From Ostrea edulis (lineage: Eukaryota): a stretch of 64,000 nt of DNA. The stretch spans positions 37,572,001 to 37,636,000 of the forward strand of contig NC_079168.1 of the NCBI RefSeq assembly GCF_947568905.1, read 5' to 3'. Below are positions 23,001-27,371 of this stretch, piece by piece; the stretch's first letter is position 1; every line of letters starts with the position of its first letter. The translations under genes were made by a program, and so were the position numbers. The notes below the pieces were generated by a model. That model was not told the DNA's origin. It was given only the letters and a program-made list of their open reading frames with translations, and searched no databases.

Positions 23001-24098
23001 TATTATCTTGTAAGGAGTTAAGATGTACACAACAAGGGGCAACCACTCGACAAAATATTTCACATCAAAGAGCTATCCAATAAGCATTGTCTCTCTCTTG
23101 TATTATGTGTCAAGTGCTTCAGATGCCAAGGCAAGGTCAATCTGCTTCCTCTTTCTCATAATGTTACTTCAAAGCCCAAAAGGTCTCAGCGCGATCGACA
23201 CGCCCTCTTGTGGAGAATAATTGTCAGAGAAATGTCGTTAGTTGGAAAAGCACACCCGAACAATGAAAGATATGTGTTTTTTGTGAACGCCAGAAACAGC
23301 TAGCAGCAGCGAGATTAGCATCGAAAGCATGTCGAAAATGAAAAACGTATGCTTCTTCCAATCTTTCTCACGAGTCACACCAAGATGTTTTTACTACGAG
23401 TCTTACTATTTGGAGAGATGATGGCGGGAAACCGTCGCACGCACCCACGTAAGACACACTGTTCACTTCAAATTATGTCATACGTGATTAGTTGTCCATA
23501 TGGCCGGTCATATGTTTGTTATTAGATAAATATTATTTTCCATTAAACGAAATTCCCATGGAAAAGTATCTTACTACGGGCGATGACGAATTCCGCCATT
23601 CTTGTATCCTGTTGCATTCCACGGTCTTGTACAGCGATACCCGTCACTAACAGAGCAGTGATGTCACTGGTAGAGGACTTGCATTTGTCAGTTATAACTC
23701 GAGTTACACACATTAACCCAATTCCGTAGTTTGTTTACATGGACTTGTTCATTGGAGGGAGATTGGTGTGAATAGCAGGTTTTTATTTTAAATCAAAATG
23801 TTACATGGTCAACATGACGGAAGTTGTGTGGTATTCATTACAAATCTTACTGACTATACGCCATTCGTTAAGGTTCTCTCTTTCATCCTAATATTATGGT
23901 GATGCATATGGCACATCAAACCTTGCAATATTCAATCTTCACCATTTGATTTTATGAATTTTTTTCATTTGTACTTTCTAATTTCCCATTTGTGTCTTGT
24001 TTATTTTCCATGTGTGTTGTTTAACTTTTCATTCGTATTGTACATTTTCCATTTGTATTGTGAAATGTTTCATTTTTTTTCATTTATATTGTACCCGA

Positions 24099-24188
24099 CA
24101 TCTTCGTTAGCCAAGGGTGACGCTCCACGGTGTTTCTCTTTTTGAACAGAGAACCACCGTGGAGCGTCACCCTTGGCTAGCGAAGACG
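24099..24188. mobile_element. 90-bp hairpin MITE with 9-bp TSD, nested in the left foldback arm
   Basis: Arms CATCTTCGTTAGCCAAGGGTGACGCTCCACGGTG / CACCGTGGAGCGTCACCCTTGGCTAGCGAAGACG; TSD TGTACCCGA at 24090-24098 and 24189-24197. Confidence 0.9.
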
Positions 24189-24571
24189 TGTACCCGAGGG
24201 CTTGATTATTTTGATTTATTATGAGGGATTTCATTAGTCAAGTTTTAGCTTGTATTGTGTTGAAAACGAGCAAGATGTTCCGGAAGCTCAACCACAAAAT
24301 GAACTGACCCCCTATTTCCGTTCAGGACTATAGTTATAACACAAGGTTGATAAGCGAGGGAATGTATAGTAAAATCAACATGAAGGTAAACAGTGGTTAT
24401 GAAAAAGATGTAGTCTATGACATGATAATTAAACCAGGGTTCAAACCAATGAAATCCTATGTAACAAATCAAAATAAACAATCCCTCGGATACAATACAA
24501 ATGAAAAATTATACAATACAAAAACTTTTACAATAGAGATGAAATTTATACATTACAAAAGAAAAACATTT

Positions 24572-25467
24572 TACAATACAGATGATACATTATACAATAC
24601 AGATGATACATTATACAATACAGATGATACATTACACAATACAGATGATACATTATACAAAACAGATGATACATTATACAAAACAGATGATACATTATAC
24701 AATACAGATGATACATTATACAATACAGATGATACATTACACAATACAGATGATACATTATACAATACAGATGATATATTATACAATACAGATGATACAT
24801 TATACAATACAGATGATACATTACACAATACAGATGATACATTATACAATACAGATACAGATGGAGGGTATACAATACAAATGATACATTATACAAAACA
24901 TGATACATTATACAATACATATGATACATTATACAAAACAGATGATACATTATACAATACAGATGATACATTATACAATACAGAAGATACATTACACAAT
25001 ACAGATGATACATTATACAATACAGATGATACAGTACACAACACAGATGATATATTATACAATACAGAAGATACATTATACAAAACAGATGATACATTAT
25101 ACAATACAGATGATACATTATAAAATACAGATGATACATTATACAAAACATGATACATTATACAATACAGATGATACATTATACAATACAGAAGATACAT
25201 TACACAATACAGATGATACATTATACAAAACAGATGATACATTACACAATACAGATGATACGTTATACAATACAGATGATACATTATACAAAACAGATGA
25301 TACATTATACAATACAGATGATACATTATACAATACAGATGATACATTATACAATACAGATGATACATTATACAAAACAGATGATACATTATACAATACA
25401 GATGATACATTATAAAATACAGATGATACATTATACAATACAGATGGAGGGTATACAATACAAATGA
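24572..25467. repeat. 21-bp minisatellite, about 40 copies (TACAATACAGATGATACATTA)
   Basis: Direct reading; it explains the TDDTLYN, QMIHYTI, CIMYHLY and YNVSSVL heptad ORFs. Confidence 0.98.
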
Positions 25468-25488
25468 AAAATTAAACAACACAAATGG

Positions 25489-25758
25489 GTTGATTGATTG
25501 AATATAGTTTAACGTCCCTCTCGAGAATATTTCACTCATATGGAGACGTCACCACTGCCGGTGAAGGGCTTCAAAATTTAGGCCTATGCTCGGCGCTTAT
25601 GGACTTTGAGCAGGGAGGGATCTTTATCGTGTCACACCTGCTGTGACACGGGACCGCGGTTTTATCGGTCTCATCCGAAGGACCGCCCCATTTAGTCGCC
25701 TTCTACGACAATCAAGGGGGCTACTGAGGACCTATTCTAACCCGGATCCCCACGGGAC
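25489..25758 (-). mobile_element. SINE copy C (full length)
   Basis: 11-bp TSD AACACAAATGG at 25478-25488 and 25759-25769; (CAAT)n tail; same 5' end GTCCCGTGGGGATCCGGG as copy A. Confidence 0.93.
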
Positions 25759-27371
25759 AACACAAATGGAAAATATAGAATACAAATAAAATATTATACA
25801 ATAGAAATAGAAAATATTAAATATTGCAACGTTTAACATACCATAGGTGAATGCAGTTAGACATTGTCATGTTACATCATAGCTCAATATATCATCTCTA
25901 TGTTTTCAAATGACTTCATATTATATCATTTCATTCATATATTATTAAAAGGTGTTTCAGCCTTTGTGTGAAGAGAGTATAAATAGGCATTGCCTGTTGC
26001 CCGATCCTATTCTTTTGAATAATTAGTGTTTAAATTTAAAATCTACGTTATAAAACAAATGTATGCGACCAGAAGATATATAAAATCTAAAACATATCAG
26101 CATTTTGAAGAGTAGTTGGGTCTTGCGCTCTTACAATCTAATTAGAATTATATCCTTTGATCCACTCGCCTAGCTCACCACACAAGGGTGGTTTGATTAA
26201 ATCGCTCTTACTGGATGGAAATATGCATTAACCTGAAGTGTGGATTCAACTTAACCGTGCTGTTTTACACCAGGTCGTGTCACAAGTTTCTCGGATATGA
26301 TTTTGCCTAGGATATGTTTTAGTTTTACAATACTTAATTTGACCCCCCCCCCTTTTTTTTTTTACCATATTACCGCGAAAGGGACCAAATTAAGACGGTG
26401 TGAAAATTGGAAATACATACTGAAGATGTTTTATTCTATTTACATAGATTTGAATTGAACTTGATTACTTGTACTCCTAAGATAGAACGACATGCATCAT
26501 TTGGTGAATAGTGTCATTTTGATATACACATAGGTTTGTTTTCACTTAGCATATTTCAGAAATGGTTCCTGGTTTACATATCTACAATTTTTCTAATTAA
26601 ATAAAAAGTGTATATTTGTTATGTACATTTACGTGTCTTTTAAGTATGTATTTGTTATGTACATTTTACTTATTTATTGTTTACAAGTACTATGAACTAA
26701 TGATCCTACTTTAAGTTTTATCATCGTACTTCTCAAAAGTAGAATCCTAGATTCCGGTCGTAGGTTCGCATCTCGATTAAGATCTGAGCTTTTTCTTTTA
26801 AATATATGTACTTACTATTCCTTCGTCAAACACTCGGTATTGAAATGATGAACCCTTTACCGGTAAATAATTTTTGATAAAAAAAACAAACCAAAAACTG
26901 TATCCATGATAGATCCCCCACGTTCTAAATTTAGCACTCTATCTATATAGTCAGTGTCGCCGATAAGAGCGAAACATTCTCGCTGGCACGTAAACTGGCA
27001 GCGCTCTGACTGTAGGGATATAGTGGTGGACACTGCCGCCATAACATGTCAGACGTGTAATTACACTACATGCTGCATTATACTATATGACGCCCTATAC
27101 TATGATATATATGGGTGTGTTTATTCAGCAATCAGGGGGGACGTACTAATAAAATATAATATGTGTTATGAATGAGTTTCCACATTGGTCTGAAATTGGA
27201 TTATGGAAATCATTGAAGATGAACGATACTTGAAAGATTCAATATGGGAAGAAAAATTATAATCCAGTATAAAAAGGTGGCTGGCATACTGAGAGTATCG
27301 AGGGATGGTGCCTGTGTACAGTCTATTTAATTACAGTATTTTATTATGTATAACATAATAGGATTAGACAG

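What the first reader, a model, noticed from the sequence alone, without database searches (positions are those of the whole stretch)
23907..25845. Foldback element that records a minisatellite arising from its own TIR subrepeats
Seen: the left arm (23907-~24240, about 245 bp after removing a nested MITE and its TSD) is the reverse complement of both ends of the right arm. For example, ctaatgaaatccctcataataaatcaaaataatcaagccctcgggtacaat aligns to ccaatgaaatcctatgtaacaaatcaaaataaacaatccctcggatacaat at about 24446, and the distal attgaatattgcaaggtttgatgtgccata aligns to attaaatattgcaacgtttaacataccata at about 25816. Both arms contain degenerate about 21-bp acaatacaaatgaaaa units, but only the right arm has amplified one variant into about 40 nearly identical copies (about 880 bp). 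The element is bounded by a near-9-bp TSD (GGTGATGCA / GGTGAATGCA), typical of FB/Mutator elements. The unexpanded arm acts as an internal control for the ancestral state.
Basis: partly seen in the sequence, partly recalled or inferred. Interest (0 to 1): 0.7.

Follow-up and report, generated by a model that had tools for sequence, protein, structure and literature searches.

The report
Old oyster transposon with private minisatellite
An old, immobile copy of a common oyster jumping gene with long inverted ends has grown a 42-unit, 21-bp tandem array out of the short repeats in one end; this kind of event is already known from fruit-fly foldback-type transposons, and the family is probably not a true Foldback/Mutator element.

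Summary
Window 23907-25845 is one copy of a very abundant non-autonomous DNA transposon family of an oyster genome. Every base is accounted for: a 676-bp MITE-like element (232-bp left arm, 206-bp loop, 238-bp right arm; arms 82% complementary, z about 16), a nested 92-bp palindromic MITE, a nested 267-bp SINE, and an 882-bp array of 42 units of 21 bp.

The array unit differs by 3 of 21 bases from the flanking arm subrepeats and lies in phase with them. Its dimer occurs nowhere else in the 895-Mb genome. The array shows multi-unit block duplications and a duplicated 3' boundary, so it grew in place by unequal exchange or slippage.

The classification does not hold. Twenty young family copies have TA...TA termini and 6-bp (16) or 7-bp (4) target duplications, never 9. 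That is the published IS3EU/GingerRoot signature, not FB or Mutator. I found no transposase, so the superfamily is inferred only.

This copy's 9/10-bp flanking repeat is real (chance about 2e-4) but atypical and unexplained. Other family copies also carry expanded arms (54 and 22 units). Tandem-repeat expansion inside the TIRs of foldback-like elements is already described (Galileo, Tetris). This is a clean new example of a known process, of modest interest.

The parts
23898..23906 (.). Left flanking direct repeat GGTGATGCA. It is a candidate atypical 9/10-bp target-site duplication. In the family's normal 6-bp register it reads GATGCA.
   Evidence: chance about 1.9e-4. Family TSD is 6-7 bp.
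23907..23937 (+). Left terminal domain of the TIR (TATGGCAC...). It matches the reverse complement of the right terminus at 24 of 31 positions.
23938..24089 (+). Left-arm degenerate 20/21-bp subrepeats (complement of ACAATACAAATGRAAAA units), unexpanded.
   Evidence: (TRF 23991-24061, period 20)
24098..24189 (.). Nested 92-bp palindromic MITE, flanked by the 8-bp TSD GTACCCGA (24090-24097 and 24190-24197).
   Evidence: I3: 45-nt arms, 91%. One search gives only sub-threshold hairpin hits to miRNA models.
24190..24238 (+). Left inner TIR domain, about 50 bp. It is conserved in the family, including the young 2.2-kb copies.
   Evidence: (I4)
24239..24444 (.). 206-bp loop specific to a MITE subfamily. 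With its inner IR it is found in many other copies at 72-81% identity.
24445..24491 (-). Right inner TIR domain, the inverted partner of 24190-24238 (82%).
   Evidence: I4
24492..24572 (+). Four ancestral-type degenerate subrepeats on the inner side of the array.
24573..25454 (+). Locus-private minisatellite of 42 units, consensus ACAATACAGATGATACATTAT, 882 bp. A duplicate of the array's 3' boundary lies mid-array at 24846-24892.
25455..25489 (+). Ancestral-type subrepeats on the outer side of the array. They contain the left copy of the SINE's TSD (25476-25488).
25490..25756 (-). Nested, very abundant SINE-like element, flanked by the 13-bp TSD ACAACACAAATGG (25476-25488 and 25757-25769).
   Evidence: One search shows loose ends and back-joints at 25490 and 25757, and depth in the millions.
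25757..25814 (+). Outer ancestral-type subrepeats of the right arm.
   Evidence: TRF 25774-25819; I2
25815..25845 (-). Right terminal domain of the TIR (...ACCATA).
25846..25855 (.). Right flanking direct repeat GGTGAATGCA.

Best explanation
Window 23907-25845 is one old, fixed, non-coding copy of a MITE-like subfamily of a large cut-and-paste DNA transposon family in an oyster genome.

Family architecture. Each composite TIR is about 230-330 bp: a conserved 30-bp terminus starting with TA, then about 8-12 tandem 20/21-bp subrepeats, then a roughly 50-bp inner domain. The subrepeats are probably accessory transposase-binding sites; that is by analogy only.

History of this copy. It was about 676 bp when it inserted into single-copy DNA. 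It later received a 92-bp palindromic MITE in the left arm and a SINE in the right arm. In the right arm, one mutated subrepeat (3 of 21 changes from its neighbours) was amplified in place to 42 units (882 bp). The mechanism was replication slippage and/or unequal sister-chromatid or allelic exchange, including multi-unit steps.

The array is a neutral, locus-private minisatellite, not a dispersed satellite. By its 6-7-bp TSDs and TA...TA termini the family most likely belongs to the IS3EU/GingerRoot superfamily (integrase-like DDE transposase) rather than to Foldback or Mutator.

Shown: anatomy, family membership, family TSD length, uniqueness of the array, internal block structure. Inferred: the amplification mechanism, the role of the subrepeats, the superfamily.
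For: Family and ends.
- The terminus has 810 hits in the genome and 0 for the control.
- Arm and loop queries each return dozens of copies.
- Twenty young pairs have perfect TSDs, 16 of 6 bp and 4 of 7 bp, and TA...TA ends; shifted-flank controls show no match longer than 3 bp.
- Young 2.2-kb copies share the terminus, subrepeats and inner domain and are 95-97% alike.

Anatomy.
- Restored arms are 232 and 238 bp, 82% identical, z about 16.
- The parts sum exactly to 1939 bp.
- The restored 676-bp element aligns end to end with unexpanded relatives of 657-683 bp at 82-83%.

Array origin.
- It has the same period, phase and orientation as the flanking subrepeats, and its consensus differs from the adjacent unit at 3 of 21 positions.
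- A hybrid unit sits at 24872 and the array's 3' boundary motif is repeated mid-array.
- Blocks of variant units recur.
- The unit dimer at 3 mismatches or fewer occurs 33 times, all inside 24573-25432, in 895 Mb.
- Unit divergence is 5.2% against 18% between the arms, so the array is younger than the insertion.

Recurrence in the family. L025 has 54 canonical units (1118 bp) and L003 has 22, against a median arm array of 213 bp.

Presence in other samples. Contigs from 4 runs of 4 studies bridge both junctions.

Superfamily signature. IS3EU has TA..TA termini and TSDs usually of 6 bp. GingerRoot has 6-8 bp TSDs (mostly 6), TA...TA termini, 100-150-bp TIRs and homologues in Crassostrea gigas (PMC10045372, PMC6839031).
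Against: - No transposase-bearing family member was found. The 6.4- and 8.6-kb pairs hold no long ORF, no ORF of 180 aa or more in any fetched locus looks like a transposase, and IS3-profile hits in the genome are not near the listed termini. The superfamily therefore rests on TSD length and termini alone.
- This copy's own flanks show a 9/10-bp repeat rather than 6 bp. In the 6-bp register GATGCA vs GGTGAA match at only 4 of 6 positions.
- Array length comes from one assembly. Short-read contigs cannot confirm it.
- TSDs of other old copies are mostly decayed and uninformative.
Confidence: 0.82

Rival explanations
1. One reading: a genuine Foldback/Mutator-superfamily element that makes 9-bp target duplications.
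For: This copy is flanked by GGTGATGCA / GGTGAATGCA, which chance gives in about 1.9e-4 of random flank pairs. The arms are long and internally repetitive like FB. An earlier scan note (s1-301729; not checked here) reports a real FB-NOF-like element elsewhere in this genome.
Against: None of the 20 young copies has a 9-bp TSD: 16 have 6 bp and 4 have 7 bp. All termini are TA...TA. An old relative with the same loop (L053) has the 6-bp TSD GAGCTG. No MULE or FB transposase was linked to the family.
Confidence: 0.06
2. The 9/10-bp flank match is coincidental. The true TSD was the family's usual 6 bp (GATGCA), has since decayed on the right side to GGTGAA, or has been altered by a small indel next to the terminus.
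For: The family norm is 6-7 bp. The 6-bp register still matches at 4 of 6 positions. Arm divergence of 18% predicts about one change in a 6-bp pair. L022 looks like a 6-bp TSD offset by a few extra bases at the terminus.
Against: A 9-of-9 match with one indel is expected in only about 2e-4 of random flank pairs, whereas a 4-of-6 match occurs by chance in 5%. A 10-bp duplication with a 1-nt loss in an AA run explains all ten bases with one event.
Confidence: 0.25
3. The long array, or its length, is an assembly artefact or somatic or individual-specific expansion and not a stable germline feature.
For: The length is seen in one assembly only. In 4 short-read contig sets the array region is fragmented, with zero depth in some bins.
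Against: Array bins carry contigs in all 4 runs from 4 studies, so array-like units appear to exist in independent samples; family paralogs may contribute at the 90% likeness used. The array has structured variant units and block duplications that are not typical of collapse or expansion artefacts. Twenty runs from 9 studies hold about 0.7 of the stretch's words.
Confidence: 0.08
4. The array is foreign: an unrelated minisatellite or another repeat inserted into the arm, not derived from the arm's subrepeats.
For: The unit carries 3-4 differences from the canonical subrepeat.
Against: It has the same 21-bp period, phase and strand as the units on both sides. A hybrid ancestral/array unit sits at 24872. 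There is no TSD or terminus around the array. The unit dimer occurs nowhere else in the genome, so no donor exists.
Confidence: 0.02

Closest known systems
Tetris foldback transposon of Drosophila virilis (Dias et al. 2014, PMC4079207)
   Same: It is a non-autonomous foldback-like element whose TIRs have a terminal domain, a variable block of internal tandem repeats and an inner domain. Copy number varies by unequal crossing-over, and arrays originate inside the element.
   Different: The Tetris unit is about 220 bp and has escaped to form kb-size satellite arrays at many heterochromatic sites. Here the unit is 21 bp, the amplified variant is confined to one locus, and the TSD and termini point to a different superfamily.
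Galileo (P superfamily) of Drosophila (Marzo et al. 2013, PMC3573991)
   Same: It has long, internally repetitive TIRs. Tandem repeats inside the TIR expand and contract independently in the two arms. The repeats are proposed to be secondary transposase-binding sites.
   Different: Galileo makes 7-bp TSDs, encodes a P-type THAP transposase, and has about 210-bp repeats in 0-3 copies. Here there are 42 copies of a 21-bp unit in a dead MITE-size copy.
Drosophila Foldback (FB) elements
   Same: The arms are built of short tandem subrepeats of variable number, and there is a small or absent loop (own knowledge).
   Different: FB makes 9-bp TSDs (own knowledge). This family makes 6-7 bp. No FB4/NOF-type coding partner was linked to it.
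IS3EU / GingerRoot DNA transposons (PMC10045372, PMC6839031)
   Same: They make 6-bp TSDs with a minority of 7-8 bp, have TA...TA termini and TIRs of 100 bp or more, and homologues are reported in Crassostrea gigas. IS3EU-like satDNAs are listed in the C. gigas satellitome (PMC8268682, Table 1).
   Different: The transposase link is untested here. The descriptions I read do not mention TIRs built of tandem 21-bp subrepeats or a foldback-like MITE form.
Tandem-repeat-containing MITEs of bivalves and Xenopus (cited in PMC8268682: Satovic and Plohl 2013; Hikosaka and Kawahara 2004)
   Same: They are small non-autonomous elements that carry expandable internal tandem repeats in a mollusc or vertebrate genome.
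   Different: In those elements the repeats form the central core (own knowledge of the bivalve case). Here the repeats are the subrepeats of the TIR itself and only one arm expanded.

Membership tests
Foldback (FB) elements | Long inverted arms made of short tandem subrepeats, with a small loop | tested here: met
   Arms are 232 and 238 bp with 20/21-bp units and the loop is 206 bp.
Foldback (FB) elements | 9-bp target-site duplication | tested here: not met
   Family TSDs are 6 bp (16 of 20) or 7 bp (4 of 20) and never 9. Only this copy shows a 9/10-bp flank repeat.
Foldback (FB) elements | Autonomous partner with an FB4/NOF-type transposase | not testable with these tools
   No coding family member was found among the fetched loci.
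Mutator/MULE | 9-11-bp TSD | tested here: not met
   Family TSDs are 6-7 bp.
Mutator/MULE | MULE DDE transposase in autonomous copies | not tested
   No autonomous copy was recovered.
IS3EU / GingerRoot | TSD usually 6 bp (6-8 in GingerRoot) | tested here: met
   Sixteen TSDs of 6 bp and four of 7 bp in 20 young copies, with clean controls. The definition is taken from PMC10045372 and PMC6839031.
IS3EU / GingerRoot | TA...TA termini | tested here: met
   All 20 young copies and this copy begin with TA and end with TA.
IS3EU / GingerRoot | TIRs of about 100 bp or more | tested here: met
   Composite TIRs are about 230-330 bp.
IS3EU / GingerRoot | Integrase-related DDE transposase encoded by autonomous members with the same termini | not testable with these tools
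   The NF033516 profile gives 47 sub-cut-off hits in the genome. Their DNA could not be fetched and none lies near a listed terminus.
Dada | No TIRs; insertion into small-RNA genes; 6-7-bp TSD | tested here: not met
   The TSD length fits, but the family has long TIRs and diverse targets. Features are taken from PMC3706591.
MITE (structural class) | Small, non-coding, TIR-bounded, high copy number | tested here: met
   The restored size is 676 bp, with relatives of 657-683 bp. No real ORF is present: array ORFs are periodicity artefacts and the only Pfam hit is below cut-off. The loop query gave 893 first-look candidates.
Minisatellite | Tandem array of 10-100-bp units, 0.5 kb or longer, at one locus | tested here: met
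   42 units of 21 bp, 882 bp, unique to this locus.
Minisatellite | Length polymorphism between individuals | not testable with these tools
   Only short-read contigs were available, and the array is fragmented in them.
TE-derived satellite DNA (Tetris-type) | The amplified repeat also forms arrays outside the parent element or at many loci | tested here: not met
   All 33 dimer matches lie inside this one array.

The most novel reading that the evidence does not exclude
The family may be the first described IS3EU/GingerRoot-type lineage with foldback-like TIRs built of tandem 21-bp subrepeats. It is highly successful in an oyster: at least 800 near-perfect termini and 2.2-kb copies 95-97% alike. 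Its arms repeatedly seed minisatellites (42, 54 and 22 units seen), and its integrase-like transposase occasionally makes 9-10-bp instead of 6-7-bp target duplications.
Probability: 0.3. Interest if true: 0.45.

Novelty: new member of a known kind. Interest (0 to 1): 0.3.

Why it matters
The copy is a clean single-locus record of how a minisatellite is born from the subrepeats of a transposon's inverted ends. The other arm and unexpanded sister copies preserve the starting state, and block duplications inside the array show the mode of growth. The process itself is already documented for Galileo and Tetris, so the value is as a mollusc example.

The more useful by-product is the family. It is abundant, recently active and non-autonomous, and its TA...TA termini and 6-7-bp TSDs point to IS3EU/GingerRoot. 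If confirmed, this would show that foldback-like TIR architecture has arisen in yet another transposase superfamily. It would also help annotate a large fraction of oyster repeats.

Tried and rejected
- Autonomous partner. The longer terminus pairs (L066 6.4 kb, L077 8.6 kb, L063, L070, L076 and L078 at 3.1-3.6 kb) hold no transposase-size ORF; they are 2.2-kb elements with extra inserted DNA.
- The IS3 transposase profile NF033516 gave 47 sub-cut-off hits, mostly in long ORFs that are probably LTR-retrotransposon pol genes (not checked). None lies near a listed terminus, and no DNA could be cut out.
- Paralogous empty site. Both flanks are single copy in the genome.
- Allelic empty site or array-length polymorphism. 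Only Logan contigs were available. Both junctions are present in all 4 runs, and no 23906-to-25846 joint is among the listed joints. Joints from 24508-24522 to 25452-25811 have sides of 21-37 nt and most likely come from paralogous family copies.
- Rfam. There are only sub-threshold miRNA-model hits on the palindromic MITE, which I rejected as generic hairpin matches.
- Coding potential of the array. ORFs of up to 258 aa arise because 21 is a multiple of 3. The only Pfam hit is below cut-off.
- TSDs of old copies. Most are decayed or the partner end is unclear, so they were not used as evidence.
- Earlier findings by sequence search: blank. One word search failed on a word limit.
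Full report
**1. The observation**

- The repeat finder returns inverted pairs that link the left arm to both ends of the right arm: 24189-24238/24445-24494 at 82%, 24076-24098/24486-24508 at 91%, 24008-24080/25416-25488 at 81%, and 24002-24061/25757-25816 at 80%.
- TRF finds a 21-bp array at 24490-25487 (47.7 copies, 87% matches) and short degenerate 20/21-bp arrays in the left arm and at the far right end.
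- The nested palindromic MITE (24098-24189) has 45-nt arms that are 91% complementary and sits between two copies of GTACCCGA.

A SINE-like element at 25490-25756 lies between two copies of ACAACACAAATGG (25476-25488 and 25757-25769). Its boundaries are confirmed by loose ends and back-joints at 25490 and 25757 in four read sets, and its depth there is in the millions.

**2. Full decomposition**

| Segment | Length (bp) |
|---|---|
| Left arm | 232 |
| MITE plus one TSD copy | 100 |
| Loop | 206 |
| Right-arm inner part | 128 |
| Array | 882 |
| Right-arm middle part | 35 |
| SINE plus TSD | 281 |
| Right-arm outer part | 75 |
| Total | 1939 |

The total equals the element's length. The restored arms (232 and 238 bp) are 81.8% identical in inverted orientation, with score 227 against 52 +/- 11 for shuffles (z about 16). 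Direct and reversed-uncomplemented controls score negative. The restored 676-bp element aligns end to end at 82-83% with unexpanded relatives of 657-683 bp (L053, L054, L045, L046). The left arm and these sister copies therefore do preserve the pre-expansion state.

**3. It is a member of a large family**

- The arm query and the loop query each return dozens of copies in the window's own genome (895 Mb, ten chromosome-size contigs). The loop query alone had 893 first-look candidates.
- Read-set labels show the organism is an oyster.
- Most loop copies are flanked on both sides by subrepeat arms and the same termini.
- The terminal 31-mer consensus has 810 matches at 2 mismatches or fewer and none for the reversed control.
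- Many matches form inverted pairs about 2.2 kb apart. These young copies are 95-97% alike, and the interior query had 6537 first-look candidates.
- The young copies contain the same terminal domain, 20/21-bp subrepeat arms and the same 50-55-bp inner inverted domain as the element studied here, around a roughly 1.5-kb non-coding interior.

**4. Target-site duplication and superfamily**

In 20 young paired copies the flanks are identical for exactly 6 bp (16 copies) or 7 bp (4 copies). All 20 begin with TA and end with TA. The same test on flanks shifted by 20 nt gives nothing longer than 3 bp. An old relative with the same loop, L053, has the 6-bp TSD GAGCTG.

Published descriptions fit another superfamily:
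- Complete IS3EU families always have TA..TA termini and TSDs usually of 6 bp (PMC10045372).
- GingerRoot has 6-8-bp TSDs (72 of 77 are 6 bp; the text then lists five 7-bp and one 8-bp exceptions), TA...TA termini, TIRs of 100-150 bp, and homologues in Crassostrea gigas (PMC6839031).
- Dada also makes 6-7-bp TSDs but lacks TIRs and targets small-RNA genes (PMC3706591), so it does not fit.

The decisive test could not be done. I found no transposase-bearing copy among the fetched loci. The IS3EU/GingerRoot assignment is an inference from TSD and termini, at about even odds. A 6-bp-TSD hAT group, which I recall from memory only, is not excluded.

**5. This copy's own flanks**

GGTGATGCA (23898-23906) and GGTGAATGCA (25846-25855) match 9 of 9 with one indel. 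Random flank pairs from the window do so at a rate of 1.9e-4. In the family's 6-bp register the flanks match at only 4 of 6 positions, which chance gives 5% of the time.

The most economical reading is an atypical 10-bp duplication that lost one A of an AA run on the left. A decayed 6-bp TSD plus coincidence remains possible. Both flanks are single copy in the genome, so no paralogous empty site exists. No orthologous site could be examined. This point stays unexplained.

**6. The array**

The amplified block is 42 units at 24573-25454. Thirty-six units are exactly 21 bp and 17 are identical to the consensus ACAATACAGATGATACATTAT. Mean pairwise difference is 5.2%. The consensus differs at 3 of 21 positions from the adjacent ancestral-type unit and at 4 of 21 from the family's canonical unit. 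It has the same period, phase and strand as the ancestral-type units on both sides (24492-24572 and 25455-25489).

Three features show growth in place by multi-unit unequal exchange or slippage:
- The motif at the array's 3' boundary (CAGATGGAGGGTAT followed by ACAATACAAATGA) recurs mid-array at 24846-24885.
- The unit after that internal boundary (24872) is a hybrid of an ancestral 5' half and an array 3' half.
- Runs of variant units recur (for example units 25-27 and 39-41; units 16 and 19-21 against 28-31).

The unit dimer, allowing 3 mismatches, occurs 33 times in the whole genome, all on the plus strand inside 24573-25432, with no control hits. The minisatellite is therefore private to this locus and is not a dispersed satellite. 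Unit divergence (5%) is well below arm-to-arm divergence (18%), so the expansion or its last homogenisation postdates the insertion.

**7. It is not unique in the family**

TRF on the 80 loci fetched by then gives a median arm array of 213 bp. L025 (chromosome 3) carries 54 canonical units (1118 bp) in one arm, and L003/L009 carry 22 units (453 bp). Arm expansion is a recurrent property of the family. This copy is special only in that a marked variant unit makes the event easy to read.

**8. Presence in other samples**

Twenty runs from nine studies hold about 0.7 of the stretch's sampled words. In four runs from four studies, contigs bridge the left junction (23300 to 24109-24137), cover the loop without a difference (24157-24489/90) and bridge the right junction (25757-25762 to 26284-26400). 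Array bins carry some contigs in all four.

No empty-site joint is among the listed joints. Array length cannot be read from contigs. The short-sided joints between 24508-24522 and 25452-25811 most likely come from paralogous copies. The insertion looks fixed; length polymorphism is untested.

**9. Other checks**

- Rfam gives only sub-threshold hairpin hits on the palindromic MITE.
- ORFs of up to 258 aa in the array are artefacts of a period divisible by three, and the only Pfam hit is below cut-off.
- The window holds no other copy of the family.

**10. Comparison with known systems**

Foldback-like elements with TIR-internal tandem repeats that expand and contract independently in the two arms are described for Galileo (PMC3573991). 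Tetris shows such repeats growing into satellite arrays, with unequal crossing-over as the proposed first step (PMC4079207, section 19). The C. gigas satellitome lists satDNAs with similarity to IS3EU elements (PMC8268682, Table 1).

The present case is the same process at an earlier, single-locus stage, with a much shorter unit, in a mollusc. The family's TSD and termini point away from FB, P and Mutator.

**11. Verdict**

This is a new member of a known kind, of modest interest.

Noticed in passing
L061-L080 (e.g. G000:C1:1335053-1337185): A young, very abundant 2.2-kb non-coding element family with perfect 31-nt termini and 6-7-bp TSDs, copies 95-97% alike, which suggests recent mobilisation. 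No autonomous partner was identified.
   Followed up: partly
L025:1487-2604 (G000:C3, about 32.69 Mb): Another family copy whose right arm holds 54 canonical 21-bp units (1118 bp), next to a roughly 460-bp foreign insert. L003/L009 have 22 units.
   Followed up: partly
window 25490-25756: A SINE-like element on the minus strand with a (TCAA)-type tail and a 13-bp TSD. Depth in contig sets runs into the millions, so it is one of the most abundant repeats of this genome. An earlier scan note (s1-271465) discusses its head.
   Followed up: no
window 24098-24189: A 92-bp near-perfect palindromic MITE with an 8-bp TSD. It scores below threshold on several miRNA precursor models purely as a hairpin.
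   Followed up: partly
window 43340-44998: A 1.6-kb degenerate tandem array with nested periods of about 45, 56, 101 and 156 bp (72-80% matches).
   Followed up: no
window 766-1077: A tandem array of a 34-bp unit (9 copies, with a 104-bp higher-order period at 90%) containing the palindromic core TATAGCGCTATA.
   Followed up: no
window 34139-35293 (+): An intronless 384-aa ORF with two CCCH zinc fingers (PF00642, E 1.9e-20), 8 kb downstream of the element.
   Followed up: no
L061-L080 flanks: The 6-bp TSDs are biased. Position 1 is G or C in 14 of 16 and position 2 is A or T in 15 of 16, which suggests a weak target preference.
   Followed up: partly
L010 and L020 (G000:C8:56523627 and 56513661): Two family copies 10 kb apart share an identical right flank, so they lie in a local segmental duplication.
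   Followed up: no
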